Shown: piece after piece, positions 8,681 through 57,941 of the stretch
How positions within the stretch are numbered: position 1 is the stretch's first letter
Layout: each line of letters begins with the position of its first letter
Assembly: GCA_976226885.1 (NCBI GenBank)
Contig: OZ320319.1
Coordinates: 23,002,001-23,066,000, forward strand
DNA: 64,000 bases
DNA from: Iphione sp. A-MEVVRFRX5
Lineage: Eukaryota
Reading direction: 5' to 3'
The notes under the pieces: generated by a model
The model's database searches: none
What the model saw: only the letters and a program-made list of their open reading frames with translations
Told to the model about the DNA's origin: nothing
Program-made: the position numbers and the translations under genes

Positions 8681-11600
8681 TCAATCAATATGCTGAGCCA
8701 AAGCCTTGGCCATGAGACGGTCTGTCAACGGAGAGTTCTCCTTCAGTGCTTTACGTTCATATAGGAGTTGTCTGAAGAGAAAGAAACACATGACAACAAG
8801 GCTTAAGAGGCCAATGTCCACACCACACAGTATCACGTGTAGATAAGTAGTCTTCATGAATATTTTGTACGTATTTCATATGTGTATATAAATTTGGTAC
8901 AATATATGCGATATATAAGCAGATTTATTTATGTGAATATAACTCAGTATCCCTCCACCTCAGTGTATGCTGCTATCATATACAGCTTTGCTTGTGAAGG
9001 AAGTGTATAGGCATGTAACAGTGTTTATTCTAAACTAAAGATAGCAGGAAAGTCGACCTGCGAGGCTTAGGGCCCCTGACCATCCAGTCTAATCAAGCAG
9101 AACGGATTGTTTCTGCTTGGATAAGCAGACTGTGATATACAGTGGAGTCTCTTTTTACGACCACCCCTTGGGACTAAGTTCAAATGGTCGTACATGTATT
9201 GATAAATTTGGTCGTAAATAGAGTATTATATGTAGAGAAATGTGGTCATAAATAGAGACTTCGCTGTAGGTCTACTCTGTCTTAATAACAAGCATGATTC
9301 TTTTTGGTGGTTTAAATTAGCGTAAATGACTTGTATAGAACCCAGTGCCAAGCATTCCTACAAGGAACCACTATATTGAAAAAACATCGGCTTATGTGAT
9401 AAAGTGCTATGGGAGTAATAAGTCCCGCAAGATCATGACAGAGGGTCAGATAGTCGGACAGCAGCAACTGCACGTCTCTCTCTCCTCTTCCTCTCGATAC
9501 GAGGCAGGGGACAATGCTAACATAGGTTATTATATATGAATAAATTATTACAATATTAACTTTAGAATACGTTTTCAATTCCTGACATGTGCCCGTAATA
9601 GAGAGTTCTCTGTTTGATTAAGCGCCCGTTATACGAGGATCGACGTAACTGCAGGTCTGTGGTTATCAGTTTACTAGGTTGTCGCTCACCTGGCAAGTAG
9701 CTTGTGCCGCCGTTCTGGAGACTTCATCGCAGTGTGGATAAGAAATTGATTCAATATGTCTCTCTGTAAGATGGAAGAACATGGAGGTACTTTAGTTCAC
9801 GTTTAGTTTTATATATTTACTCTTGCGCAAAAGTCATCATTTTGACAACCATTTCCAGCAGCAAAAATTAATAAAATAATTGCAAAAATGTCTATATTAG
9901 ATACGAGCGCCTTAGGTGGTTGCACTGGGAGTTAAGACAGTCCCTCTTTCGTTTCCTCTCCTTCTCTCTCTCTCTGTCTGTCTCTCTCTAACTCTCTCTC
10001 TCTCGCTCGGTGTGGCTGCAGTTGCTGTGGCACTGGCACAGTACAAGGAGGCGGGGGCTCTGATGACAGTCACTTTTGCTCTGAAGATCCTACACATGAT
10101 CAATATACCCTCAGTGACACTCTTGACAGAGAGCCCCGTACAAACTAGAATCCTGCAGAGAAGGCCAGGAAAGCTCGAATAGACCTGCCTAGCAGTGAAG
10201 GCCAGGGGTCTTCAATACCCCAACCAAGTCCAAGCTCAAGTTCAACTCCAGGTACCGTACTGAAAAGCTGACTGCAGTTAGGAAATATGGAAGGGTTCTA
10301 TAGTGCCGGCAATCGGAGAAATATAAGAAATTGCATCAACTGCTAATAAAATCAACCTTCGGTATATTCAGTCCTACAATAGGTGAAAACAAAACAAAAC
10401 AATACAATGGTGAACAACGTGCAAGTTTCTCAGCGATCGGTCCGTTCTTCATGCAGCCTTTTTACACATACACACCCGATGAAGGGTACACTTGCTACCC
10501 AACTTGTCTGTAGTTAAGTCAATTGATCTTCTCAGTACAAAATAAAGCCAGATCTGTGTGAAGCCTTGGTTCACAGCCTCATCCTCTCTTTTATTTCTCT
10601 AAAATCCTTATAGTAGAATGTTCTATTAACTTGCTTAATTTGTTTGCACCATCCCCAACAAAGATGGATGGTGTGCAACTTAGGCCTACCGTGCCCTGGC
10701 AGTCGGCCAGTAGGCCTATTTCACTTTATGTACATATAATTTTTAGGTCACGTCGAATCCGCTATAATTATGCACACTTATACACGCAAGAACAAACACA
10801 TNNNNNNNNNNNNNNNNNNNNNNNNNNNNNNNNNNNNNNNNNNNNNNNNNNNNNNNNNNNNNNNNNNNNNNNNNNNNNNNNNNNNNNNNNNNNNNNNNNN
10901 NNNNNNNNNNNNNNNNNNNNNNNNNNNNNNNNNNNNNNNNNNNNNNNNNNNNNNNNNNNNNNNNNNNNNNNNNNNNNNNCATAAGTGAGAGAAGGTCTGT
11001 CTCGAAGACAGACGGTATGCTTCTATATATGTATTTCTATGTGTATGGCACGAATATGCACATACATACATACATACATAAATACATACATACATGTACA
11101 TGTATATGTTTCTGTATGTATAGCAAGACCTCATACATGTATACATATACATATACCCTGGCTTTGCAGTTTAAACACCTATGAAACCGTCTGTACCCCA
11201 CGTCCACCGCCAGTCACACAGATTCTAAAAGATACCTACTTGGGCATCGCTGCCACCAATGAGGACGATTTCATAGCGACAGTTATTGAGGCGGTCGGCA
11301 GCCTTGTCGTAGTCACCATTCTCATACGCCACAAGCGCCTTGCAGATCGTCTCGCCTACCGAGGCTGTCACTACACGATTTGTACCGAAGTGTGATGTGC
11401 TAATATTGGAGATCAAATAGGAGACAATCATGATGAGATTAAAAGTGACCAAACTCCATATGGTGGATGCCATTTTGTCGCATTCGTCAGTGAGAAAAGG
11501 TCCATTTTTCAGAACATTTATAAGGAAAAAGATGAAGGCTTTGTTCACGTCAGCAGTGCGTGATGAAACTGTTCTGCAATAGTCGTTGGTGATCCTCCTG

Positions 11601-28216: not shown

Positions 28217-29343
28217 ATGGGACCTCCTCCAAAGAAAAAAAAACATGATTGGAAAGATGACGACCAGGCACGACAAGATGTCGCCCAACCAAGGGGGTTT
28301 CTCCATGGAAGCCGATGAAGAAGCCCAGGACCTGACACCATTATTGACTAGCTCTGATATAGGTGATTTACAACTGCTGGCCCTAGACCAGACAAGGGCG
28401 CCTAATAATCAAGGTGAGCAAAGTTACGATACCGCGGAGGTTCAGATGCCAAAGGAAGGGGACACCCGATTGAAATTGTGTGAAACTGTACAAGAATTCA
28501 AAGATATCATGATGTCAAATAAGTCTCTGCTGGATAAGGTGTCGGATGTTGAAGCCTCCTTAAAAGAGTTGCAAACTAAGGTTACAAATCTCTCAGAGGC
28601 ATGGGAGGGAGTCAACGCTAGGCTTCGCAAGGTGGAGAAGGCATTGCATGACAATGACCATAATGACCTATGTAATACAATAAAACAAAGAGGAGGCTTT
28701 GTCTAAACTGGAAAAAAGATGCTCTACACTTCAGTGGAAACTTGGGGAATATGAAATAGGAGACGGGAGGCCTATATCGGACCAGGTCAACGAGCTTATG
28801 CGAGCAATTGACGGAAACTACCTGGGCGTGACGCTGCTAGCAGCAACAAGAATAGGGAAGAAAGGTGACAAGCTTTGTTCCATGATAGCAATGTGTACGT
28901 GTACTGAGTCTCGGGCTAGCATCTATGGGTGCAGGTACAAACTCAAAGACACTACAAACATATCCTTATGGCCACGTGACAGGCACGGACAGCCCATGCC
29001 AGGCACGGCCAGCTCCATCATGGACATGGGAACCATGACAGCATCAGACCGCCATGTGACAGTCACAGACAGCACTATTATGGCCACAGATAGCCCTGTG
29101 ACAGTCACAGGCAGCCCCGGCAAGCCCCATCATGGACACAGGGATGATGACAGCATTAGACAGTCCTGTGATGGTCACAGATGGCCCCATCATGGCTACA
29201 GATGGCCCCATGACAGCCATAGGCAGCCCCGTGCCAGTCATGGCCAGCCCCATGCCAGCAGTGGCCAGTCCCATCATGGACACAGGGACCATGATAGCAA
29301 CAGACAGCCCTGTGATGGTCATAGGTCCCGTCACTCGCAATGA
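28217..29343 (+). pseudogene. Decayed LINE ORF1p-like sequence (coiled coil plus RRM-like region), frameshifted, no ORF2
   Basis: Coiled-coil stretch LLDKVSDVEASLKELQTKVTNLSEAWEGVNARLRKVEK, followed after a frameshift near 28700 by ATRIGKKGDK...IYGCRYKLKDTTNISL, resembling the AHRLGK...KLKGT.I motif of LINE ORF1 RRMs. A probable original start MGPPPKKKK at 28217 is out of frame by a further shift. Confidence 0.55.
28985..29335 (+). repeat. Degenerate coding minisatellite at the ORF1 C-terminus (peptide ~SPIMDTGTMTAxDSPVTVT)
   Basis: Recurrent CCATCATGGACA..GG..ATGA.AGCA..AGAC.GCC.TGTGA..GTCA units. Confidence 0.8.
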
Positions 29344-29684: not shown

Positions 29685-31754
29685 AGAGATGTGGAACTCT
29701 TGGGTCCTCTGGGGGGTATTGATATTTAAAGCCTGCTTTCTCTCGGTACTGAACGATCCTCTGTGAGGGGCACCTGTCCTTGGATGGAAAGGAAAGGGCT
29801 ACAAACCCTAGACCATCAAATAAAATACCACATGTGCCTAACCATGTTTGACCTATCCTTCCTACAGCCAGTGACTGTATGACAGATGGGAAGGACAAGA
29901 TGCAGAGGGATGTGTCGATTCTCATTTGACAGACCAAGGAGCAGCCTACAAGGAAGGGGCACTGTGAAATGATCTCCCAGTACCTATAAGAATGACAAGG
30001 GAAGAAAGCTGTTAAACAAATTTTGAATTCATTTAATTCATCCTTTCCTTTTTAAATTGCCGTTATTAAATTATCCTTGTTGTTTGTGAATTGAAATAAA
30101 GACTAAAACTAGGATAAGAGATGTGGTTGAATAGCGTCTGGAAGATGACATAGTATCTCAATAAAGAAATCAATGAAAATCAAAATCTGTAAGAGGTTAA
30201 TGCAAGAGAGTAATACAGAGCTAGCTGAACTAATAATGAAATCATGGATTTATGTGTCCATGTAGTAATATAAAATATATGGAGGAATATGTACCCAACT
30301 TTATGGCCATATCATGATTTTACTGGCGTGTCCCTGTCATGCTGTGAAGTGTACACAGTTTTATGCATTACTTTTATTCACATAGATATCACTTTTTCAT
30401 TGCGGTGCGCATGTAAGAAGATCATTTTTGTTGTGCTGTACGACTTCTGTCAATTTCTGCTTATAGTATAGGTCCTTGCCTTAGTTATCTGAAATAACTT
30501 AACTATAAGCTGTATGTAGCAAACAAAATGAACAAAAATACTGCTAACGAAATATTAATATATTAATATGTAATACAGCAATGGTAAAGTAATGGTAAAA
30601 GGTGACAGATTGATTATATCAATGATGATCTTGTATGTTGCCAAGGGTGAATAAAACAAACTGTGTATGTATAGTGTAAAGTTATAAGGACTAAGTGTCA
30701 TCCTTTGTGAGGGAATATAATGCACAATGACAACTTTTTGTGTAATTGACTTTGCACATTGGTATACACGATGATCCACTGTCTGTGTGTGGTATTACAT
30801 TGTTTATGTAACTCCTTTCTTACATGTAGGCCTACCCAGTAATGCATCCCAAACTGAGACTGTTGAGATGCAGTATCTAATGAGAACTTGGCTCTATGCC
30901 TTAATGCTGTTGTTGGAGATTGGCTATCTGTCAGTGCTTTGTTCTACATGACAATTGATGAATAACACAACAAGTTTTACACAGGTTGGTGAACCTCTTT
31001 ACACTGACAATTGGTATGTAAGATGAGGGTTGTGTATCACTTGGGGGATGCGCATTTTAAGATCTACAAGAGACTGTGCCACTAATCAGCAATAAAGGTT
31101 TTTCAAAATGAGCCTCTGGTGTGGTGTACATTTTATTGTTACAAATAATTATCTATGCTGAAAGTACATGCTCTTTCTAGCAAACGCTCAGTTTCACATT
31201 TCGATGGATACATGTATGATATCTACCAGTTGTATTTCATGCCTTGCACTGGATCTCAGCCACCGCATAATTTCGCTCGCATACGGTTTGTATAAAATTT
31301 AAAAACACCCATTTCCCCACCTTCAGGTCCCACTGATGAAAAGTCTTAATAATGGTTATAATTCAAATGTCTACAAATATCATGGGCTTTTGTCATGGTT
31401 ATTTGATATGATACAGTCATGAGTTGTAAGTAGGGAATCAAACGACACAACAATAGAACGGTGCGAAAACATTTATCATCAGTACTGCATATGTATGATT
31501 ATTACCAGTTGAAATAAAGTATTTAATGATAATAATATGTATGAATATCTCTAATATTTAACAACAATATAAAGACATAGGCCTACTTGTGACCATTTGC
31601 AGGGTGCCATCTTTATGTTTCTACGTCTTCGATAGTCTTTCTCATTTGTCTGTTTCATTTTTATCTCTAACGTCTGTAGTTTGCTGTTTTCCGAATGGTT
31701 AACTATTCAAGTACCAGGCCCATTCCCTTTCTGCATCTCCGTCATTCTCACTGC

Positions 31755-31840
31755 CTGTCTGTCTGTCTGCCTGCCTGTCTGTCTGTCTGCCTGCCTGTCT
31801 GTCTGCCTGCCTGTCTGTCTGTCTGCCTGCCTGCCTGCCT
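31755..31840. repeat. (TGCC/TGTC)n compound microsatellite upstream of the lectin gene
   Basis: Direct reading. Confidence 0.9.
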
Positions 31841-31986
31841 GCGCATCTCCGTCTGTCTCCCTCCTGGTCCTCGCTCAGATATCGTTCGTTCGTATGTATT
31901 TTCACTTCTTGCGAGCCCATGTGGCTGACGTGAGAATAACAAATGCCACTTTCACAGGGTTATCACTTCTTGATTAGAAAATGTAA

Positions 31987-31992
31987 TATAAA
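31987..31992 (+). promoter_or_regulatory. Candidate TATA box of the lectin gene
   Basis: TATAAA ending 45 nt before the ATG at 32038. Confidence 0.5.
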
Positions 31993-32037: not shown

Positions 32038-32300
32038 ATGACTGTTAGACGCTCTGGTCTGGTTCTCCTCCTTCTCGTATCATTAGGGATATGCGGTAAG
32101 TTCCGATTAAAAAATAACTGGAAAACAACTATATCTTCGTGTAATTACATGTATGACCTCCCTTTAACCAGCTTCTACAGCGCCCTCTACCCTCCTCTGC
32201 CTCTGCCATGTACCTATTTGTGATACGTACATGTGTCCGTCCCTGTTGGGTTCTCTCGATCTACTCCCCTGTGACTATCTGTCTTTTATGCTCTCTCGCC

Positions 32301-32354
<54 letters not shown>

Positions 32355-35300
32355 TTATAAACCTCACTTACTACAGTATGGGCACTAGTGAATATCTAGA
32401 GTCCCGGCTTCCAATGGTCACCTGTTCCTCAGCTCCAGATATGGTCTGAGACCATGGAAAAGGGTCTGTGTTAGGCTCTGTCTTACCTATTTGACTGTAG
32501 AAAGTGAAAGTTGTGAAAAAACATAGATCGCAGAAGATTTGGGGGATTAAAAACCAACTTGTGATGAATTGGGGGGGGGGGGGTAACCAAAGTTATGGGA
32601 ATAAATCATATATCCAGAGATATAAGCGACACGCAATTAAATAAGCTTTCTAAATATAGTTGCTTCGCCTTTTGGTCAGGCTAGGTCAGTTCTGTAGGTG
32701 ATCATATGGAAGGGTTTTCTCTGTAATTGTTAAATGCTGAAAAATTTGGTAGTTGCACAGTTATCTAAACAAGATCAGTTCATTTTCAGAGACACAAGGT
32801 TTCTTTGTACCTCCATGGAAAACCGAAAGTTGGGCAGAGTGGACAAGACGATGGCCTGACTGGACAACAGGTTGGCCTGATTTGACAACAGGATGGCCTG
32901 ATTGGACGACAGGTTGGCCTGACTGGACAACAGGATGGCCTGACTGGACGACAGGTTGGCCTGACCTGACAACCAGTTGGCCTGAGTGGACGACAGGCTG
33001 GCCTGACTGGACAACCAGTTGGCCTGACTGGACGACAGGCTGGCCTGACTGGACAACCAGTTGGCCTGATTGGACAAGTTGGCCTGACCAGACAACAGGA
33101 TCGGAGACAACAGAATTGACAACAGAATGGCTGACAACTGATAGGACAGAAACTTCTGAATCGCCAGACGAGACAACAACAGGATGGCCGGGCAGGACAA
33201 CAACAGGTTGGTTTTCCATATTTACCACTGATGATTCAGTTAGACAAAATATGACAATGTATGCAAATGCACAGTGCAAATGACCTTTCTTACAATCAAG
33301 TAAATTACTGCTCTCCTTGTCCGTTTTTCGTTGGGAGTTCATCACTAGAATTATTTCATCAAAAATAACATTTCGTTCATTGGCATTACATGTATATGGA
33401 AATACAGAGAGTCGACCTTTTCTTAAAATAGTCCTGTGTCTGCCAATTCCTCTCTCCCTCTACTACCTCCTTCTTTCTTCCACATTTTCAATTCAATAGA
33501 GAGCGTCGGATAATGACGAATGTCGCATAATGCGGTCATCAACCTACAGAGAGGAGTCTCAATCCAGTTTACCCTTTAAGTAGTTCCATATTGTGTTAGA
33601 TCGGATCACAAGGCTCGACTGTACACTTCATCATTATCCAGATAGTCCACCAGGTGGCAGGCAGCCCTACTGTGCTCCCGGTTGGGAACTGCGTGGAGAC
33701 ACCTGCTACACAGTGTTGAAAACTAGGATCACCTGGCCATTTATCTCCTCCTGGAAGGAAGCTGCTGCCTTCTGTGAGCAGGCCGCCTACAAGGGAACCC
33801 TGGTCTCCATCCACGATTACGAAGAGAATGACTTTGTGGTTAATCTACTGTACGATGCCCATGCACCCAAAGCTTGGATAGGCCTCTACTACGATCGGAG
33901 AGGTTAAAATGTTTTCAGGCTTTTGCTGTGTAATTTAACCGTGCGTAGTCACAGATGTATATGTATTCGATAAGTATGTTATGTCTTGTGTTTAAATATG
34001 TTATATATAAATGGCATATGGTAACCTTAATATCAAGATTTACTTTGCTTCATTTGATGAGCTCTGCTGTTCTAGGCCTTTAACTACAATTTAAACTAAG
34101 AAGAGCTGTGCTCTTCTGTGTATTACCAACTTAAATCCTGATGAGGACTTTCAGTTCCGTCAAATTGTATCTTTTGATTTATCATAGCACAAAAGACACC
34201 CAAGATAAAAGTACCTTTCATGGACTGCCAATAACATACATGCACATGAATGCACAGAAGAAATCCTATCTCTCCAGGAAGAGAACTGTCCTGCCCAGCT
34301 GCAAGTGTTCTGATAGGTGTATTAAAATTTTGTAAAGGTACGAAACCGCTTACTCTGAAGATCACTTTGTTTTGGTTACAGATTTTTCGTACAGATGGCA
34401 GGATGGTACAAGGCTACGGTTCAGTAACTGGGATTTCGGCTATCCTAGATATGATTCCGTATGTTCCCCATTACTCATATACACAAATATATATTTTATC
34501 TCCCTAACCTCTACATGTCGTAATATATAATATAGACTTTAAACATACTTGGGTAATAGCAAATACCAGCCCCATCAATGGACAATAAAGTTGAAAAAAC
34601 AAAGCACATAAAGGCAAGGGGCAAAAAGAATAAAAAAAACTCACATAGCAGCAGATGCACATGTACCGTAGGTATATCTTTACATAGTCTATCACAGATC
34701 GGTAGTGACACATCGGGGCATACAATACCAAAAGCTGTAGGTAGGTGCTGTAGGTATGGCCTTAGGTAGAAACGGACGGGGGGGGTGTCTATTGTGGAGG
34801 GATACATAAATTCCATATCCGAACGCGTACATTTATATACATAGCCACTGCATGTGGAGATTGTATTTTATCTAGCTCATAAATAATTCTTCGAAAAGCT
34901 AGGGAAGATTTTTTAAAAAGCCACAAAACTAAACTATATGTATATTTATGGTATATGGAACAGATAGTGACAATACTCTTGATTCGTATGTTGTGTGCAA
35001 AACGCACTGTTCGAATCGTGCCATGTGCACTGCCCATTTCTCAGAATGCAAAGAATCTTGCGACATATATACTAGGTGTAAAAATGCGGTAGAAATTAAG
35101 CCACCTTATGGAGACGTCTCCAATAGGGACATGCCTCTTGTCAGGACACCTATATGAAGAGCTGATTTTACTTACATTATAGTTAAAGAAGTCTCTAATA
35201 AGGACATGTGGATAGAGGGACAGTTTCAGAAAGAACAAACGGTGTCTGATTAGCGTCTTTCTACTCTAGAAATAGAAATTGTCGCGGTTTCCATTGTGCT

Positions 35301-37974
35301 CCCCCCGCCCCCTCCAACGTGCGTAATCATTGTTGTTATTGTTCATTCATATTTCTCACACTGACTGTCCTCTCTCTCCTGTCTCTCTAAACCTCTCTTC
35401 CCCGCTGCTCCCTTTTCTCTTTCTTTCTTTCCCTTTCCCCTTTCCAAGCCCTTCTCCGTGGACAGTGCAGCACGCTTTGCCACCAACTGATGAGCGTCAC
35501 TGTGTACAGAGTGTGTGACTTCTGTTCTGGCTCAAAGCGTCTCCACCGGTTCTGTTATCATTTATGGGCTTGTGTCTGTGATACACCGACAGGATCTAGG
35601 CTGTACACTGATAAACGGAAATTATAGCTGGGGTCGCTGGATGGATGAGTCATGTGAGGAAGTCCCTGAGGTCTTCATTTGTTCAGCCCCTTCAGGTAAG
35701 TCGTATACCCTTTCTTCACAGCCATTATGTCAAGCATTTATTAGAATCCGTATATTACCAACATAATGGTTGTTCTTTTTGTTTATTTTAAGAGAGTTTC
35801 CTTGGTTATTTCTCACCGGGGTGGGTGGTGATCATAGTGAGCACCACAAGTGGTAGAATATTCCCGTTGTCTTGGGAGGTACCAGCGGATTCCCTTTGAG
35901 TATTTCAATACAATGTAGAGTAGCAACTGAAATTTCAGAAAACCATTGGGACCAGTTTTGCTAAGAGCAAGATAGCCTGCTACCTGAGCTGTTTACTTTT
36001 TGAAACACAGTGTAAATATCAAAACCACTCCGAGCAAACTTTGGTCTTTACAAGGAGTTTCTAATCAGATTGTCCTCACACCCCAATTCCCATAGAATTT
36101 AATGATCACATGCATATTAACTTGACATGCAGATGTTTTGAGTGGTCCTTTTCTACAGTACTCCCACAGCTGCTGACTTCCCCAGTAGATCTGAGAGTGA
36201 CTGGGGGATGGTGGGACTAGGAAGGCTTCATTTATTAAAATATCATCACCCCCACAGCTGCCAGTTAGATTGACTGGTGACTGGGGCTGCTGCTGGGGCT
36301 TGGAAAGCTATAGTTACTAAAATGTCAGTTTTACCTCCATAGCTGATAACTTCACCAATGTAATAGAGGGTGACTGGTGTTGCTGGTGGGGCTGGGAAGG
36401 CTACAGCTACTAAAATGTCAGTTTTACATCCACAGCTGATAACTTCACCAACGTGATGGAGGGTGACTGGGGTTGCTGGTGGGGCTGGGAAGGCTATGGT
36501 GACAACTGTTACCTGTTCGAGCCAGATGCACCCCATGATGAAGGACGAGTGGACTGTGATGATCATTATCCTGCATACGCAGTCTACATCGAGAGTGCCG
36601 ACGAAAATGAATATATTGCTAGGAAGTTACGCGAGCACACGAAATATCAAGTACAGGGTTCTGTGAGGCTTTGGTTGACTTACCGCCATCATGATGGTAC
36701 GTAAAATATTATCAAAACCATAGGCCATGTGGAAGTCAGGAGTCACTGACGTATTTTTCCCAGAGTGTTCTGTTAATACTACTCTTTTACTTCTATTTTT
36801 ACAATGAGGCACTTCAGTATTAGTAATATATCGTATAAAATGCCAGTGTAGAATTCAGGCCACTTGCATCTGGGTGGAACTAATTTTCTCTGTGGGGAGG
36901 TAGTTCCTGTTCAGTTCAATGGGAATTATTATTCGCACAACGATAATTTTCACTTTGACTACGGTTTGCGATTACGAACATTGACTTATGCAAAAATGTC
37001 CTAAATGTTTAATATCCGTGGTGAAGAAACATAAGAAATCTGTTGGAACTGTATCACTTATTGAAAGATTTTACATGAAAACCTTCGCAGAAACAGAAAA
37101 AGAAATTCCACTTTGCAACTAAATAAAAGTACAGTGGAATTCCTCTTGTCAACATAAAACGGACTGAACAATGATCTTGAGTCGCCCTGATTAACAGGGA
37201 TTTTAAACTTGCATATAAGAGTGGGTCCTGTCTTTTCACTGTCCAAAGTACGGATTGTCCTAATTGTTGGGCATCCGGATTACGGGATTCGACTGAATTT
37301 GTTCTCCTTTTCCCTGCATCGTGACTCGCAAGTCGAGAAGAAAACTATACGTACTTGGAATGACTATTTTGTTTCTTACAAGGGTTTCTTAGTTAAAAAT
37401 TACGAATGAGACCGAAGACGAATGAGTGCACAAGATACCATTTCATTTTAGTGAACAAGTGACGGTTTGACATTGTCAAACTCTCACTTTTCTTGACTGC
37501 AATAACCCAACACTCCCCACAAATCTCTGCCAGTTAGGAAAAGTTACAAAACATACAGCTAGCATATGTGCAATCATGGTATCAGTAGGGCCAGTAATCA
37601 AAACGAAGTGAGATATGAACAATGTCCAACCCTCCCGGGGTTGCGTCCAAAGTCATCATATAACAAAACACGTTACTTTTCTATTGATTGCTACATATAA
37701 AACAAAGCGATGTTGAGGCATTTTGTGTTCTTTCTGTCTCATTTTCCTTCATCAAGGTTGGACTTGGCATCCAAGTGGGGCTACAGCCACCTTCCGTAAT
37801 ATCCCAGCTCAGACCTATGACGTGTCCATTGGTAAAACCCATGTCGATATGGATGTGAAGACTGGCATATGGAACGCGGCCACTTCACCTGCTCCTATCC
37901 TCGGTCGTGTGTGTAAGGTTCGCCGGTATGCCAGACCACAAGCATCCATGAAGAGCCCAGACAAGAGAAAGTGA
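32038..37974 (+). CDS. Secreted protein: signal peptide, Trp/Thr/Asp heptad repeat, two C-type lectin domains
   Basis: Exons: 32038-32095 (MTVRRSGLVLLLLVSLGIC), 32790-~33206 (repeat; donor weak and uncertain), 33642-33902 (YCAPGWELRGDTCY..AAAFC..LVSIHDYEENDFV..AWIGLYYD), 34382-34458 (YRWQDGTRLRFSNWDFGYPRYDS), 35593-35695 (DLGC..GRWMDESC..FIC), 36436-36696 (GCWWGWEGYGDNCY..IESADENEYI..LWL), 37757-37974 (GWTW..GIWNA..RVCK..TGA). All junction phases are compatible. Confidence 0.85.
32852..33100 (+). repeat. 21-bp coding tandem repeat, 12 units (WPDWTTG consensus)
   Basis: Eleven 21-bp units plus one 18-bp unit, consensus TGGCCTGACTGGACAACAGGT. Confidence 0.95.
36160..36500 (+). repeat. Four tandem diverged copies (85-93 bp period) of the acceptor plus 5' end of the CTLD2 exon
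   Basis: CCA(C/T)AG|CTG acceptors end at 36169, 36257, 36342 and 36435, each followed by GTGACTGG..TGGGG..GGAAGGCT-like sequence. Confidence 0.85.
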
Positions 37975-38005: not shown

Positions 38006-38164
38006 CAGGCCCGTAGCCAAGGGGGTATCGGGGGTATCGTCCGATACCCCCCAAAGCCATTAACGCCTATTTGCTTCTATAGAGAAGGAATAAAATTAGT
38101 TCCACCTCTGCTGTATTGGGGTATCTTCCGATACCCCCGAAAAATGTTCCTGGCTACGGGCCTG
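38006..38164. mobile_element. 159-bp MITE with 14-bp perfect TIR and 5-bp TSD in the lectin 3' region
   Basis: TGCTG|CAGGCCCGTAGCCA ... TGGCTACGGGCCTG|TGCTG, with two internal hairpins GGGGTATCNTCCGATACCCC. Confidence 0.85.
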
Positions 38165-52100: not shown

Positions 52101-54699
52101 AACTTTACTCCTAGTACTGATACAAAGAATTTTACACCTTAGTTACAGGAGTTTTATTTTCTATTCATACTGCATGCCATAACCTAGAGGGCAAACCTTA
52201 CATTTTCCTCTGGGTTCTCTACTAGAGCGCTGGCTAGTGTTGCAACATGCTGTCGGAGTGCTCTGAGCTTCTCCTGCCGAAGCTGGAGTAGCTGGGAAGT
52301 GCTCAGAGATGGCAGGGGTCGTGATGGCTGCAGGTTCTCCGTCTGTTCTGTTTCATTATGTCCTTCAGCATCTTCGCCTTCATCATCTGATTTTCGCGTT
52401 AATAAAACGAATTCCTCATAAGTTCACAACTACTTCACAAATTTGTTTATTCTATTTCATAAAAATTAATCTTTTGGTTCTTCCGGTAGTTCTATGATAA
52501 GTCAGTCCACCAATATGTGACTACAGCATTTGAGGAGAGTCCTTGCATCGTTCACTGAATTGGTAACTTCTGAAATAAATGGTCTCATCAGAAATCTGGA
52601 AGCAAATCATGGAGGCCATGAGGAATCAGCATTCCGCCAATATAGCCAACAAATATAGTCACATGCAAGTCACTCNNNNNNNNNNNNNNNNNNNNNNNNN
52701 NNNNNNNNNNNNNNNNNNNNNNNNNNNNNNNNNNNNNNNNNNNNNNNNNNNNNNNNNNNNNNNNNNNNNNNNNNNNNNNNNNNNNNNNNNNNNNNNNNNN
52801 NNNNNNNNNNNNNNNNNNNNNNNNNNNNNNNNNNNNNNNNNNNNNGAGAGATGAGTTTGATGAAGAGGTAATAGACTTAATAAGCAGAACTAAGGATATG
52901 CAGAGAGCACAAAGGACAGAGAGAGGGGGTCTTGTACTGGATTATTTTTCGAATACCGCAATGGGAATACTAAAAAGTGAGGTTGCAACTTACTTCGAAT
53001 CAAGCTACTCTAGTTGCTGGAATATGAGTTCCTACTTTACTATATATAGTTAATAATCCATGAAAAGAAAGAAAATTTTTAATTCAAATGAAGGACGAGT
53101 CTTACTCTGGTCCTGGCACTAACAAAACATCTTGAAAATACATGTACACATGTACATGTAAAGATGGGTTTCCTTCACAGGTTTTAATAGTTTGTTCAGA
53201 CGTCATCAACATACCTGACTCATGTTGCACTTCAACACTCTGTTGGACGAGACCAGCCTTTGTTTTGATAGGGAGAAGTGACTTCACCTCCGCCACACGT
53301 GGTTTCCTCTGGGCTATCTCCTCATAACGTGTCTCCAAATCATCTGTTGACTGGCCCTTCTTTTTACGCCTTTTCTTTGAAGGCTCAGTTCCTTCACTGT
53401 AAAAGCGCAGAGCAACCCTTAACTACTTCGAATTTTACTTATCAAAGAACGTCATGAGGTAACGTCACATTTCAGTCTCAAAGCAGGAAATGTTACGCCT
53501 TCACAAAAGCAAGCCAATATCTTTCTCCGGATTGTTCTGCCAAAAATGACTGCAAAGGTCAAATCAGAAAGGAGCACGACCTCGAAACGGAACTTTCGAC
53601 ACATATAACCACAATTTTCCAACAAAAAGATTGATAAAGACTAGAATTGAGTATAGTTACCTGTCAGATATATCTGTGATAAAGCTGTAGTCTCTATCAG
53701 GGGTGGCAAAGTATTCATAATCAGCCTCGGATAGTGGAATATCCTCCGTTTCTTCACGCTCCAACCTACGCTGTTCCTCTGCAACTTCTGGATCGACATG
53801 GCCCTAAATATGGCAAGTAAGCTGTGTTCAATACTATTAATGACAGATACTTCCATCAAACTGTCAAGTTAAAAACAGCTGAGGCTAAGTCAGAGATTAG
53901 ATCATAGAGGAGACCAAACTGAGGGGAAAACCTAGCAGATCAGGTATGTCCATCTACATGTATACATGTGCACATGTATATCACCCAAACCCATAGTCAG
54001 CCCATTTCCTAACATGACTTCATATGCAGGTCTTAAATGCGGTGCATTTATTCACATAAGGTACTCAAATATTGATGTTTTTTTAATGAAATAGTCTTGA
54101 GATAAACAAAAAAACAAGTATAATTTATATTATAACTATAAGTATTATCCGTACAACGCTTCACTTCAATACCTAGATTACGTTAGTAACTTTCCGTTGT
54201 GTATGATGATATGATTCCTTTCATGTTATTTAACATTCTGAGTAATGTTATTTTCAACTTCAATACATTTTAGCCGTACCTGTGTTCGTTGCTTTAGGAA
54301 ACGCAAATACTGGCCCTTTTTGACTCTGTCTTTCAATTTACCCTGCTTTGCCAATGTATTCAATCGCTTGTTTGAGAGTTTGACTGCAGATACTTTTGAT
54401 CCGACTTTCTTCTTTCCACGACGCAACTTTCCTTTTTTCTATGAAAGGGAATGACAGAAATGAACAACATGGAAATACTATAGGTGAGTATGACAATCAA
54501 CCTTATTATCGCTCAGAAGATCGTTGCTTACTATAAAGTCAGTTTTATGGCACTATACATATCGTTTATCTCAGGGGGGCGACTGAACTCTCCTGTGCAA
54601 ATTGCCATGCTAGTATGGCCTTATGTTATTTGATGAAATAATTGCTAAACTGGCAAATAATAACACACACGTGTGCACCACCGCACTCACCGCCGCCAT
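43154..54699 (-). CDS. NOC3L: Nucleolar complex protein 3 homolog (terminal exon unresolved)
   Basis: Phase-consistent exons: 54691-54699 (MAA), 54280-54438, 53661-53803, 53215-53396, 52202-52386, 51573-51734 ([17 protein letters not shown]), 50586-50679 ([17 protein letters not shown]), 50293-50372, 49668-49787 ([11 protein letters not shown]), 48872-48943, 48400-48567, 47896-47976, 47332-47432 (TYFRILK), 46954-47026 ([10 protein letters not shown]), 46580-46786, 45973-46083, 45704-45832, 44262-44359 (YHPTVR), 43154-43238. Matches recalled NOC3L motifs. Confidence 0.95.
44569..44845 (-). mobile_element. Left-end fragment (~275 bp) of the same DIRS family inside a NOC3L intron
   Basis: Reverse complement of ~2819-3087. 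The first ~105 bp read identical to the left terminus, and similarity continues through the gag start (MDLASSI) before breaking off. Confidence 0.85.
45531..45725 (-). repeat. Three tandem diverged copies (82-84 bp period) of a NOC3L exon 3' end and donor
   Basis: CTTACCCGCAGCATATGAAG (functional, 45699), CTTACCGGCAGCAAATCAAG (45615) and CTTACTCCCAGCATATTAAG (45533). The intron side is also similar (GACAATGCAGTG vs GCAATGCGGCG). Confidence 0.6.
52676..52845. other. Assembly gap (N run) in a NOC3L intron
   Basis: 170 Ns. The flanking exons join in phase 1. Confidence 1.
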
Positions 54700-54872: not shown

Positions 54873-55153
54873 ATGTCTGTCTGCTGCGGAAATCAGGATG
54901 ATAGTGCAGTATTGCGACTTGATTGTGTACAATGTTGGAGACATAGACAGACTAGTATAAGAAGTCAGCCATGGACATCTTTGTTGGCATATTTGACTGC
55001 ATTTCTCTGCCTATTTGCCCTTGTTCAGGGCAAAGACCAGCAGTGTGAACCTTTGACGTGTGATCATGGATTCTGTATGAACGGAACTTCGGCCTGTGAA
55101 TGTGAGGTTGGTTGGATCGGCGATTCTTGTGACCGCTGCGGGGGTCGAATAAG
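54873..55153 (+). CDS. ATRN: Attractin / attractin-like protein, exon 1 (extended signal peptide plus EGF-like domain); exon 2 not found in window
   Basis: Hydrophobic leader LLAYLTAFLCLFALVQG, then CEPLTCDHGFCMNGTSACECEVGWIGDSCDRCGGRIR ending in a phase-2 AG|GTGAGA donor. This matches the ATRN/ATRNL1 exon-1 end (C..CGGRFR) that precedes the CUB domain. Confidence 0.8.
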
Positions 55154-57941
55154 GTGAGAATTTACCTTTAATAACAACACTGTCACTCCGACTTAACACA
55201 ACCCGATAATAACCGCGATAGTTTAAATACTTAACGATTTTTAAAGATGAAGATTAAGTTATAATTACATGTATACCCTTTCGATTCCATATTGTGTGAA
55301 AGTCTGCTTTGTTTTGTTGGATTTCGCCACGTTCACACTGGTCTTTCAAGTCATGTTCAATGCTTTTCCCCATAAATAGACATCGTGTACATGTGCTGAA
55401 CTGTCAAACGATCCTATGCTCTGAACATATATTGTTTTAATTTTACCATAGGCCTGCGTTTTCTTAAACTGGACACCTTGCTTAATTTTTCTAACGGTTT
55501 TGTTTTTAAGATTTTAATGGTATCCGGTAATATTTAATGCTAAACCGTACTGTTAGGATGTACAATGACATGTATTACTCTATTCTGTTTGGCCCCACAT
55601 GATATCACTTGTGCTTACCTCAGGTTAAAAAGAAAGCCTTTTAGGAAACGATGTAATAGTCTTTTTGTCAGTTCACATCGAATACAGAGATTTTATTTGC
55701 CTAGTATTTTTTTTCATGTGTGATGATGGCTTTGGGGACTGTAGCCTTTTAAAACATAATTATGGATGCTTTTTTTATTCTTAGCTAGATGCTACCCGTA
55801 GGTATCATTATGGTTTAGGAATCATATACATATATTATATACATATCATACACCTGCCACAAACGAATACCTGAATCAATCAGAGTATGTTGAATGTGTA
55901 TCGCTTTAAACTCTCACACCTCAAAAATCAGCTTTTAAGTTATGTGTTTGACCACAGTTGTTGTATATCCACATACATCCATTTGTAATCAGTGTACAGT
56001 GTACATGTACATGTGCCATCTAAGAAGCTAAAAGTCAACTAACTGTGGGTGTTACCAAGTCCTCGTGTATAACAGACATATATTTAATTACCCACATTCA
56101 CTTGCTGCTTGTGCCGCTGTTGATTTTTTTCTGCGTACTGTCAAATAAGACTTCTACACGGAAGTATTGCTGTCCACATTCATAGGACCTATCAAGACGG
56201 TGTTTTCACAGAGGGTGGAGTGTGAAAAATGTCAGGATTCTTCGTGTGATGTCTTCACCCTTTTTTTGTATATAACAGTCACATTAGAGTGTATTCTACT
56301 CCTTTCTGATGGTGGGCCATCTGGGCAGCTGCCTAGGGTTCCCTCTAGGGTGGTTGGCTTGCTGGATTGTAGCCTAATCTGATGTACGGTGTCAGCCAAC
56401 CAATTTTACAAAAATTTAATTAGTTTTTAGACTTGTATAAATAAAAACAGCAGAACTGAATGTATGAATGGAACTTAATCTTTGTCTGTGTCTGTCTGCC
56501 TGTCTGTCTCTCTCGTGTGCTTATGTGTACTGTCTCATATGCTCTCTCTTCTTTACCCCCTTTTTTCTTGCATTTCCACGATGTTCTCTCATCTCTCTGT
56601 CTCTCCATTTCATGTCACCTTCACTCCCCTTTAAAGCTGGAGCCCCACCCAAAACTGCCACGAGGACACCAGGAGGACACAGGTGTGTTTCTGCTCCCCC
56701 CCCCCCCGACCTCCTCTCTCGCTCTAGCGACCTCACACGCATCTCTAGTGCATCCATTCCTTGTGTGTAGTAAACTATGGGTGAAAAAAAAACAGTCACG
56801 GATGGTCTGTTGAAGTTAAGTGGGCATATTTCATTTAGAAGTATATTTGCTCGCTCACACCTACCCAAGAAACTGGAGAATCGGAATGTGTCTACTATCC
56901 AGGAGTGTCTCAGAACTACACAGCCTTGTCAGTCAGCTTGTTCCAAAAAGGCGTTAGTGAAATCTTTATCGTTTATTATTACACGGACTTTAAAATTTGG
57001 GCGTTTAGAGGGGAGTGTTTGTTACTTCAACGTCATGGAATATGTCTAGATGGGTGTTGCCAGTGCCAGGGTGCACCAAGGCTCTGCTAGTCATGAGCTA
57101 ATTGATGAACAGGTATACATCTGTTGATGAGGGAGATGTGTTCCATAATATGACTTCACCGTGACAAACTTTCTTTATTGGAGGTATCCTGTTCCAACAG
57201 AATATTCATGATTTTTACTTTACATTTACTAGAATCGCCCATTTCTTATATATATATTTACACATATATGTGGTTTCTCCTGCTTTCATTTTGTAATTTT
57301 TTCTAGAAAGCGGTTTGGGAAAATGTGACTTAGGCCACAACGGTTTGCAAGCTTCGTTAAAAAGAAGCTTCCCTCCCAGAGGCTTCATTAACACAGGTGT
57401 ACCTGTATACACTCGCAGTGGACATTAAATATCTACAAGGTCGCTAGGGATGCTTGAGCAGAATTACTGGGGAAGAGAGGAAAGTAGCGAAGATTATTTT
57501 TTTAGGAATGCATGTAATGAAGAAGTAAAAACTGGGACCACATTTTTGGGGTGGGTGGGTGGGGGGGTAGCTGAACTATTCTATTCAGTTAACACCGGCC
57601 CTTTTTGTTGTATCACTGCAAATATTTAACAGGATTGAAACTAAGTCTGCATAGTCATCTTGTCCTAGAACAAGTCTGATCTGAATTGAGAGAGAAGCCT
57701 GCCGTTCTGGTGACCATATGTGATGCCATTTAAGGTCAGGGTCAATCAGTGCGTTGAGATGTCCTTTGTGCTACCACACTTCTCTGTGATGGGCACGTAA
57801 ACAACTTTAATTTTTATCAAACTAAAAGTGAATTTGCACCTCCAACCTTTGTTCCCGTCGGACCTCACGGTAAGTTCCGAGTGGCCTTTGTCGCACAGCT
57901 TTTGACCATGTGGCAGCTTTCGTGGGAGGTTCTGTCAGGAT

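What the first reader, a model, noticed from the sequence alone, without database searches (positions are those of the whole stretch)
32038..37974. Secreted double C-type lectin with a 12x WPDWTTG tryptophan heptad array
Seen in sequence: signal peptide, then 12 tandem WP(D/E)(W/L/Q)TT(G/S) units, an acidic Thr-rich linker and two CTLDs. Established knowledge: W-x-x-W is the DPY19 C-mannosylation consensus, and it occurs in 9 of the 12 units plus an upstream WAEW. The Thr pairs are plausible O-glycosylation sites. Signal peptide plus CTLD plus repeat is the architecture of echinoderm spicule-matrix proteins (SM50 type) and of mollusc perlucin-type shell lectins. Inference: this could be a densely C-mannosylated, regularly acidic (Asp every 7 residues) aromatic polymer-like spacer for biomineral, adhesive or extracellular-matrix assembly. 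Trp falls at heptad a/d spacing, but Pro argues against a coiled coil. I do not recognise this repeat from any named family.
Basis: partly seen in the sequence, partly recalled or inferred. Interest (0 to 1): 0.8.

Follow-up and report, generated by a model that had tools for sequence, protein, structure and literature searches.

The report
Secreted lectin-like protein, tryptophan-rich repeats
This is an intact but unannotated worm gene for a secreted, acidic protein that joins a unique arm of twelve tryptophan-rich seven-residue repeats to two lectin-like domains. It is probably a coupling component of mucus, tube or cuticle material, but no RNA or protein data could be obtained.

Summary
A seven-exon gene at 32038-37974 (+) has GT-AG at every intron, a TATA box and a poly(A) signal, and encodes 464 aa. 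The parts are a signal peptide, one 417-nt phase 1-1 exon with 12 in-frame 21-nt units WP(D/E)(W/L/Q)T(T)(G/S), a Thr-rich acidic tail, a clear C-type lectin-like domain (CTLD) and a second, very divergent one.

The units differ mostly at synonymous sites, so the peptide looks constrained. No protein among 1.84 billion representatives has a two-Trp heptad. The hits are unrelated Pro/Thr heptads, or reading frames through short tandem DNA repeats (minisatellites). The gene's own product is in no searched collection.

CTLD1 has YPR and WMD where sugar-binding lectins have EPN and WND, so "lectin" is nominal.

Dense C-mannosylation is possible but doubtful. WPDW puts Pro at +1, where the enzymes want a small residue.

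Mussel Pvfp-1 has C-mannosyl-hydroxy-Trp repeats, and Atrina apfp-1 has a signal peptide, aromatic repeats and a CTLD.

The spliced protein was searched exon by exon only.

Verdict: a real gene and a new variant of a known kind, with its function inferred.

The parts
31987..31992 (+). TATAAA box, 46 nt upstream of the ATG
   Evidence: Pattern search; sequence
32038..32095 (+). Exon 1: start codon and a 19-aa signal peptide (basic MTVRR, a 13-residue hydrophobic core, G at -3 and C at -1). The donor is GT, phase 1.
   Evidence: The signal-peptide call rests on the (-3,-1) rule and is an inference.
32790..33206 (+). Exon 2: 417 nt, phase 1-1 (symmetric and skippable). It holds the whole repeat arm and the Thr-rich acidic linker.
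32852..33100 (+). Core array: 12 in-frame units of 21 nt (one of 18 nt) coding WP(D/E)(W/L/Q)T(T)(G/S)
   Evidence: TRF, unit table, 21-mer scan. Thirteen of 20 differences from the consensus are synonymous.
33101..33206 (+). Decayed repeat units forming a Thr/Glu/Asp-rich linker that ends in WPGRTTT
33642..33902 (+). Exon 3 (261 nt, phase 1-1): N-terminal half of CTLD1, from the CxxGW hairpin to the WIGL strand
   Evidence: Pfam Lectin_C 8.4e-08. PDB hits: DEC-205 1.9e-18 and PLA2R 4.7e-15.
34382..34458 (+). Exon 4: the long-loop region of CTLD1. YPR sits where sugar-binding CTLDs have EPN or QPD.
   Evidence: aligned with DEC-205 WDENEPN and PLA2R WDTGRER
35593..35695 (+). Exon 5: C-terminal part of CTLD1 with three Cys. 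WMD replaces WND.
   Evidence: Pfam Lectin_C positions 82-106, E 0.038; PLA2R alignment
36436..36696 (+). Exon 6 (261 nt, phase 1-1, the same size and phase as exon 3): N-terminal half of a divergent CTLD2 (CWWGW...NCY hairpin, alpha-1 Cys, WLTY strand)
   Evidence: The 18 best PDB hits are all CTLD N-terminal halves (best is 6a7t at 1.2e-3). BLASTP against exon 3 aligns the hairpin.
37757..37974 (+). Exon 7: presumed C-terminal half of CTLD2 (only the last Cys is kept), a basic tail and the stop codon
   Evidence: No Pfam or PDB match. The alignment to exon 5 is in register but not significant, E 3.5.
38089..38094 (+). AATAAA poly(A) signal, 115 nt after the stop

Best explanation
Shown: an intact seven-exon gene encodes a 464-aa secreted, strongly acidic protein. 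It has 63 Asp+Glu against 38 Lys+Arg in the complete codons of exons 2-7.

Its mature N-terminus is a single-exon arm of 12 heptads, WPDWTTG, flanked by decayed copies. The arm grew by slippage or unequal exchange of a 21-nt unit, with 42- and 84-nt higher orders. The units differ mainly at synonymous sites.

Behind the arm sit two domains. The first is a CTLD of the mannose-receptor type that lacks the canonical Ca2+/sugar ligands. The second is a strongly diverged CTLD that has lost the inner disulfide. A short basic tail follows.

Inferred: the arm does not fold into a globule. It is an extended, proline-kinked chain that carries a Trp pair, an Asp and a Thr pair every 7 residues. The Thr pairs are probably O-glycosylated, because the second Thr has Pro at +3.

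Inferred: the protein works as a two-handed extracellular coupler in a secreted material such as mucus, tube lining, cuticle or glue. The CTLD pair would dock on a protein or glycoprotein partner. The aromatic, acidic, sugar-coated arm would make many weak contacts (Trp stacking on sugars or on other aromatic groups, and hydrogen bonds) with polysaccharide or with neighbouring molecules. The fan-shell byssus protein apfp-1 works this way, with a DOPA-bearing repeat arm and a mannose-binding CTLD.

My odds: real gene with this architecture 0.85; exon 2 present in the main transcript 0.75; structural or adhesive coupler rather than immune lectin 0.5.
For: Gene model: canonical GT-AG at all six introns, consistent phases, a CDS of 1395 nt, TATAAA at 31987 and AATAAA at 38089.

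Repeat.

Constraint on the peptide: 13 synonymous against 7 non-synonymous nucleotide differences from the consensus in 10 heptads. That is about 0.30 per synonymous site against 0.04 per non-synonymous site. The binomial P is 2e-5 counting every difference and 0.04 counting each variant type once.

No fold: AlphaFold2 gives pLDDT below 50 and no secondary structure across the array.

CTLD1. CTLD2: plus exons 3 and 6 both being 261 nt and phase 1-1.

Similar period-7 Pro/Thr repeats serve as linkers in extracellular mosaic proteins. One example is abalone cubilin-like, between CUB domains. Another is a Sushi plus Lectin_C protein.

Functional precedents: apfp-1 (PMC4912638) and Pvfp-1 (PMC4275877, PMC12721214).
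Against: There is no RNA or protein evidence.

No orthologue was found. Conservation between species could therefore not be measured. The within-array constraint test is weakened because the units share descent.

The single-sequence AlphaFold2 result is weak evidence for disorder. Ligands, glycosylation and localisation are all inferred.

The arm is acidic and has no Lys. The cation-pi cohesion shown for Pvfp-1 therefore cannot be copied directly.
Confidence: 0.5

Rival explanations
1. It is a humoral immune lectin. A soluble pattern-recognition or agglutinating protein uses its CTLDs to bind microbial surfaces. The repeat arm is only a mucin-like spacer or a site for self-association.
For: Secreted invertebrate CTLD proteins are mostly interpreted as immune receptors (for example PMC10140915, listed). 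There is a signal peptide and no membrane anchor. The closest solved relatives of CTLD1 are endocytic pattern receptors (DEC-205, mannose receptor).
Against: The Ca2+ site 2 ligands are replaced: YPR for EPN and WMD for WND. CTLD2 is degenerate. There is no collagen or coiled-coil neck for oligomerisation. Immune CTLD genes usually lie in tandem families, but the window holds no paralogue.
Confidence: 0.2
2. The repeat exon is not part of the protein. Either it is an in-frame minisatellite that is skipped or unused, or the whole gene is silent.
For: Exon 2 is phase 1-1, so joining exon 1 to exon 3 keeps the frame. Many library hits are plainly reading frames through minisatellites, such as WPDSLNN, WPDVSLQ and IWPDYII. 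The spider YPDWTTG array carries stops. No transcript data exist.
Against: The open frame runs 531 nt and extends beyond the array on both sides. It is the only open + frame. The acceptor has a good pyrimidine tract and the donor is CAG|GT. Differences between units are concentrated at third codon positions of this frame. No unit carries a stop or a frameshift, and the one length variant is a clean 3-nt loss.
Confidence: 0.12
3. It is a biomineral matrix protein of the SM50 or perlucin kind. An acidic CTLD protein with a repeat region would nucleate or shape calcium carbonate.
For: It has a signal peptide, a CTLD and a repeat. It is strongly acidic, with a regular Asp spacing. CTLD-only eggshell proteins (ovocleidin-17, struthiocalcin) appear among the weak PDB matches.
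Against: Other agents place the genome in the annelids (not tested here), and most annelids do not calcify. No sequence relation to any matrix protein was seen. The repeats are N-terminal and Trp/Thr-based, not the Pro/Gly/Asn or Asp-rich runs I recall for such proteins (my own knowledge).
Confidence: 0.08

Closest known systems
[quoted passage not shown]
   Same: It has a signal peptide, then short degenerate tandem repeats rich in Pro and an aromatic residue (VVPDYKPP, PVDYKPP; note the shared P-D-aromatic), then a linker, then a CTLD. It is shown to act as a two-handed coupler: the repeat arm cross-links and the CTLD holds a glycosylated partner.
   Different: apfp-1 is basic (pI 9.47), uses Tyr/DOPA and Lys, has one CTLD with a sugar-binding motif, and is a mollusc protein. 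The protein here is acidic, uses Trp, has no Lys in the arm, has two CTLDs and lacks the sugar-site residues. No sequence homology was tested or claimed.
Perna viridis foot protein-1 (Pvfp-1)
   Same: It is a tandem-repeat secreted adhesive whose repeats carry Trp in a WxxW setting. Those Trp are C2-mannosylated and 7-hydroxylated, and the Thr are O-glycosylated (PMC4275877; PMC12721214). This is a direct precedent for a C-mannosylated Trp polymer.
   Different: As I recall them, Pvfp-1 repeats are Lys-rich decapeptides with Thr at +1 of the sequon; the original paper was not held. Its cohesion is attributed to cation-pi contacts with Lys. It has no CTLD. Here the residue at +1 is Pro and the arm is anionic.
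CTLDs of the mannose-receptor family (DEC-205/LY75, PLA2R, FcRY)
   Same: These are the best solved-structure matches to CTLD1: 1.9e-18, 4.7e-15 and 1.4e-12 on exon 3, and 6.4e-06 for FcRY on exon 4. Most CTLDs of that family also lack the EPN/WND sugar site (my own knowledge).
   Different: Those are large membrane receptors with 8-10 CTLDs, a ricin-type domain and a fibronectin II domain. This protein is small, soluble and has two CTLDs.
Period-7 Pro/Thr linker repeats in invertebrate extracellular proteins
   Same: They share the register x-P-(D/E/N)-x-T-T-x. Examples are abalone cubilin-like AYPDYAT between CUB domains, shrimp IPDNTTG, and P0022 with LPEVTAK plus Sushi and Lectin_C.
   Different: None has two Trp per unit; the WxxW count is 0 in almost all of them. 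The host proteins are unrelated, so this is a recurring repeat style and not a family. The nearest motif is spider YPDWTTG, a stop-ridden 21-nt satellite with different codons and no CTLD nearby.
Thrombospondin type 1 repeat / cytokine-receptor WSxWS C-mannosylation sites
   Same: They hold the WxxW sequon in a secreted protein that passes through the endoplasmic reticulum unfolded (PMC10154233, PMC12990085).
   Different: Those motifs sit in folded, Cys- and Arg-stabilised domains and have Ser, Ala or Thr at +1. Here there is no Cys or Arg ladder, and +1 is Pro.

Membership tests
[quoted passage not shown] | Profile match above the curated cut-off | tested here: met
   Exon 3 alone scores 33.3 bits against a cut-off of 22.6, E 8.4e-08. 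Exon 5 matches profile positions 82-106.
[quoted passage not shown] | WIGL strand and six cysteines of the long form (hairpin pair, C1-C4, C2-C3) | tested here: met
   AWIGL lies in exon 3. There are three Cys in exon 3 and three in exon 5, at the aligned places.
Ca2+-dependent sugar-binding C-type lectins | EPN or QPD tripeptide and the WND motif that form Ca2+ site 2 | tested here: not met
   YPR aligns with the EPN of a DEC-205 CTLD. WMD occupies the WND place in exon 5 (the register was read by eye).
[quoted passage not shown] | Recognisable CTLD sequence over both halves | tested here: inconclusive
   N-terminal half: the 18 best PDB matches are all CTLDs, the best at 1.2e-3, and the hairpin aligns with exon 3. 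C-terminal half: no Pfam or PDB match. The C2 and C3 cysteines are absent. The AlphaFold2 model of exon 6 alone is useless, pLDDT 35.6. The fold of the joined domain was not predicted.
C-mannosylation substrates (DPY19 sequon) | W-x-x-W/C motif in a secreted, unfolded stretch | tested here: met
   Nine WPxW sites plus WAEW lie in exon 2 behind a signal peptide. The array has no predicted structure.
C-mannosylation substrates (DPY19 sequon) | Small side chain at +1; no Cys at -2 | tested here: not met
   The +1 residue is Pro in all nine array sites, and only WAEW has Ala. The rule comes from PMC12990085. That review does not mention Pro at all, so this lowers the claim but does not exclude it. 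The -2 residue is Thr or Ser, never Cys.
C-mannosylation substrates (DPY19 sequon) | Hexose (+162 Da) on Trp in the native protein | not testable with these tools
   This needs mass spectrometry.
Mucin-type Pro/Thr/Ser tandem-repeat domain | Tandem repeats in one exon that are rich in Thr, Ser and Pro, with Pro near the Thr | tested here: met
   The array holds 23 Thr, 12 Pro and 4 Ser in 83 residues. The second Thr has Pro at +3. Actual O-glycosylation is not testable here.
Alpha-helical coiled coil (heptad a/d) | Helix-compatible heptads with hydrophobic residues at a and d | tested here: not met
   There is a Pro and a Gly in every heptad. AlphaFold2 predicts no helix at residues 30-105.
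Sea-urchin SM50/PM27 and mollusc perlucin matrix proteins | Sequence relation of the CTLD or repeats, and expression in mineralising cells | not tested
None appeared among the PDB or library hits. The resemblance is one of architecture only and is recalled from memory.

The most novel reading that the evidence does not exclude
The arm is a true glyco-tryptophan polymer. Most of its 21 Trp would be C-mannosylated, and perhaps hydroxylated as in Pvfp-1, with the Thr pairs O-glycosylated as well. It would be the densest C-mannosylation substrate known and the first in an annelid. It would show that a DPY19 enzyme accepts Pro at +1. It would also tie a sugar-coated aromatic rod covalently to lectin-like domains that could bind the same sugars on neighbouring molecules, giving a self-assembling material.
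Probability: 0.15. Interest if true: 0.8.

Novelty: new variant of a known kind. Interest (0 to 1): 0.45.

Why it matters
If it is expressed, this protein gives a natural test of how far the C-mannosylation sequon stretches, because it offers nine W-P-x-W sites in a row.

It would also be a second, independent case of Trp-based chemistry in a marine secreted material, after the green-mussel foot protein. Tyr/DOPA is the usual basis for such materials.

It adds an annelid example of the "repeat arm plus CTLD" design, which has been shown to couple stiff and soft parts of a bivalve byssus.

For genome annotation, it is a complete gene that is missing from every protein collection searched here.

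Tried and rejected

2. Word-index protein searches. The exon 2 reading frame, exon 6 and the exon 3 reading frame all gave nothing. The length window of that tool excludes a 464-aa relative, so these blanks are weak.

3. Full library search with exon 2. It gave 272 hits, none an orthologue. They are convergent heptads or minisatellite reading frames.

4. Two degenerate DNA patterns, one for the repeat and one for the CTLD2 hairpin, against metagenome contigs. Both gave 0 matches.

5. AlphaFold2 of exon 2 and of exon 6 alone. Both models have low confidence, so no fold search was run.

6. Paralogues in the window: none.

7. Neighbouring reading frames against Pfam: nothing except one EGF exon about 17 kb downstream. 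Rfam and tRNA scans of the whole window found nothing.

8. Antisense reading frames across the array (194 and 142 aa). I rejected these as by-products of a stop-free repeat unit.

9. Coiled coil: rejected because of Pro and Gly in each heptad.

All searches went exon by exon, by reference.

11. The original Pvfp-1 papers were not held. The Pvfp-1 repeat sequence I give is from memory.

12. The N runs at 10802-10979 and 52676-52845 were left untouched.

Full report
**What is there**

The + strand between 32038 and 37974 carries a complete seven-exon gene. The exons are:

- exon 1, 32038-32095
- exon 2, 32790-33206
- exon 3, 33642-33902
- exon 4, 34382-34458
- exon 5, 35593-35695
- exon 6, 36436-36696
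- exon 7, 37757-37974

All six introns are GT-AG, and the phases fit together (1, 1, 1, 0, 1, 1). The coding sequence is 1395 nt, which gives 464 aa plus a stop. A TATAAA lies 46 nt before the ATG and an AATAAA lies 115 nt after the stop.

**The repeat**

Tandem Repeats Finder reports a 21-nt period with 13 copies, and an 84-nt higher order, at 32829-33101. In the frame set by exon 1 this reads as 12 units of WP(D/E)(W/L/Q)T(T)(G/S). Ten units are clean heptads, one is the hexamer WPDWTS and one is WPDQTTG.

Decayed units flank the array on both sides: PWKTES and WAEWTRR upstream, and a Thr/Glu/Asp-rich stretch ending in WPGRTTT downstream. Arrays with a homogenised centre and worn edges usually look like this.

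Nine units carry Trp at positions 1 and 4. The array is 25% Trp and 28% Thr, with one acidic residue per unit. The 21-mer occurs nowhere else in the window, and shuffled sequence gives no match.

Only this frame is open across the array on the + strand. The open frame of 531 nt runs past the array on both sides.

**Is the repeat coding?**

Among the ten full heptads, 13 nucleotide differences from the consensus are synonymous and 7 are not. Only 4.3 of the 21 sites per unit are synonymous. That is about 0.30 changes per synonymous site against 0.04 per non-synonymous site.

The binomial P is 2e-5 if every difference counts. It is 0.04 if each variant type counts once, which is the fairer figure because the units share descent. 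No unit has a stop or a frameshift.

This argues for constraint on the peptide. Exon 2 is phase 1-1, so an isoform without it would stay in frame. That possibility remains open.

**The lectin-like domains**

Exon 3 alone passes the Pfam Lectin_C threshold (33.3 bits, E 8.4e-08), and exon 5 matches the end of the profile. Against solved structures, exon 3 is closest to CTLDs of DEC-205 (1.9e-18), PLA2R (4.7e-15) and the yolk-sac IgY receptor. Snake-venom and echinoderm CTLDs come next. Exon 4 aligns with the long-loop region of the same receptors.

In that alignment the EPN of a DEC-205 CTLD lies over YPR. In exon 5 the WND place reads WMD. CTLD1 is therefore a sound C-type lectin-like domain with all six cysteines, but it lacks the residues that hold Ca2+ and sugar in true C-type lectins.

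The second domain is much weaker. Exon 6 gets no Pfam hit, but its 18 best PDB matches are all N-terminal halves of CTLDs (best 1.2e-3). Its CWWGW...NCY hairpin aligns with that of exon 3. Exons 3 and 6 are both exactly 261 nt, both phase 1-1, and both end just after the WIGL-type strand. This points to a duplicated CTLD unit.

Exon 7 matches nothing. Laid by eye and by a non-significant BLASTP alignment on exon 5, it keeps the final Cys but has lost the inner C2-C3 pair. An AlphaFold2 model of exon 6 alone was useless (pLDDT 35.6).

**Is the repeat known?**

Pfam finds nothing in exon 2. A full-text search for the motif found only unrelated acronyms.

A phmmer search of exon 2 against 1.84 billion representative proteins gave 272 hits with E up to 1e-3, but none was a relative. 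The best 150 are a mixed set of period-7 repeats of the style x-P-(D/E/N)-x-T-T-x. Examples are:

- abalone cubilin-like proteins with AYPDYAT between CUB domains
- a shrimp protein with IPDNTTG
- a Sushi plus Lectin_C protein with LPEVTAK
- LRR and PDZ proteins
- many metagenome reading frames that are plainly translated minisatellites

Almost none has a WxxW at all.

The nearest motif is YPDWTTG in a hypothetical protein of the spider Araneus ventricosus. It turned out to be a 21-nt satellite with in-frame stops, different codons and no CTLD within 10 kb on either side. A local phmmer run found no CTLD related to this one in any of the hits.

The search did not return the gene's own product either, so this protein is absent from the collection. 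Word-index searches of exons 2, 3 and 6 and two degenerate DNA scans of metagenomes also found nothing. Given the length window of the word search, these are weak negatives.

My conclusion is that the repeat style is common and convergent, while the two-Trp heptad is so far unique.

**How it probably works**

AlphaFold2 gives no structure for the array (pLDDT below 50, no helix or strand). This fits a Pro and a Gly in every seven residues and rules out a coiled coil.

I read the arm as an extended, probably polyproline-like chain. In such a chain, residues i and i+3 face the same side. Each unit would then show a Trp pair, and the face would turn by a third of a circle per unit. This geometry is inference.

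The second Thr of each pair has Pro at +3, which is a favourable setting for mucin-type O-glycosylation (established preference, my own knowledge).

For C-mannosylation, the WxxW rule is met nine times, plus once in WAEW. However, the 2026 review of the enzymes states that a small side chain is needed at +1 (PMC12990085). The C. elegans enzyme structure shows the peptide backbone sharply bent and hydrogen-bonded next to the acceptor Trp (PMC10154233). Pro at +1 is therefore an untested and doubtful case. I put the chance that the array is substantially C-mannosylated at about 0.15-0.25.

**Precedents**

- The green-mussel foot protein Pvfp-1 is a tandem-repeat adhesive. Its Trp residues are C2-mannosylated and 7-hydroxylated, and its Thr residues are O-glycosylated (PMC4275877; PMC12721214).
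- The fan-shell protein apfp-1 has a signal peptide, then Pro/aromatic repeats (VVPDYKPP, PVDYKPP), then a linker, then a CTLD. It is described as a coupler in which the repeat arm cross-links and the CTLD holds a glycosylated partner (PMC4912638).

The gene here combines both themes but differs in charge (acidic, no Lys), in the aromatic residue, in having two CTLDs and in lacking the sugar site.

My best reading (0.5) is a two-handed coupler of a secreted material. The rivals are a humoral immune lectin (0.2), an unused or skipped repeat exon (0.12) and a biomineral matrix protein (0.08).

Several other agents of this scan place the genome in the annelids. I could not test this from this window, and I used it only to judge the biomineral reading.

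**Surroundings**

The window holds no paralogue. Thirty of the longest neighbouring reading frames show no Pfam domain, apart from one EGF exon near 55 kb. There is no Rfam family and no tRNA. The gene stands alone in gene-poor, repeat-bearing DNA.

**Verdict**

It is a new variant of a known kind, namely a secreted repeat-arm plus CTLD protein. Interest is moderate and would rise sharply if transcripts and Trp-hexose were found.

Noticed in passing
window 36157-36435: The 3' end of intron 5 holds three progressively decayed tandem copies (93-nt period) of the acceptor plus the first 60 nt or so of exon 6. The nearest copy, at 36343, keeps a pyrimidine tract and an AG. It reads DNFTNVIEGDWCCWWGWEGYSY and then hits a TAA. 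It could act as a decoy or alternative 3' splice site, giving a protein that ends after CTLD1.
   Followed up: partly
window 38006-38164: A 159-bp element that looks like a miniature inverted-repeat transposable element (MITE) sits 32 nt after the stop codon. It has 14-nt perfect terminal inverted repeats and subterminal inverted repeats. It carries the only AATAAA within 240 nt of the stop, so the poly(A) signal may come from the insertion.
   Followed up: partly
window 33642-33902 and 36436-36696: The exons for the N-terminal halves of the two CTLDs are both exactly 261 nt and phase 1-1. Both end just after the WIGL-type strand, which suggests an internal duplication of a CTLD unit. The second copy has since lost its inner disulfide and an intron.
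   Followed up: partly
window 31751-31842 and 32304-32352: A (CTGC/CTGT)n microsatellite lies about 150-240 bp upstream of the TATA box. A perfect (TC)24 lies in intron 1.
   Followed up: no
window 54873-55157 (+): This reading frame has a hydrophobic, signal-like stretch followed by an EGF module (Pfam EGF_Teneurin, 5.8e-05, just under the cut-off). It may be the first coding exon of a separate downstream gene.
   Followed up: no
window 28245-29343 (+): Two adjoining reading frames (153 and 214 aa) lie in a stretch richer in G+C and skewed towards A. They give only weak coiled-coil-type Pfam hits below threshold. This could be a decayed mobile element or an intronless gene with a frameshift.
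   Followed up: no
L001 10774-11223 (Araneus ventricosus BGPR01000611.1): A 21-nt satellite coding YPDWTTG, with in-frame TAA and TAG codons, underlies the GenBank hypothetical protein GBM28436.1. That protein is probably an annotation artefact.
   Followed up: yes
window 10802-10979 and 52676-52845: Two runs of N (178 and 170 bases). They were left as they are.
   Followed up: no
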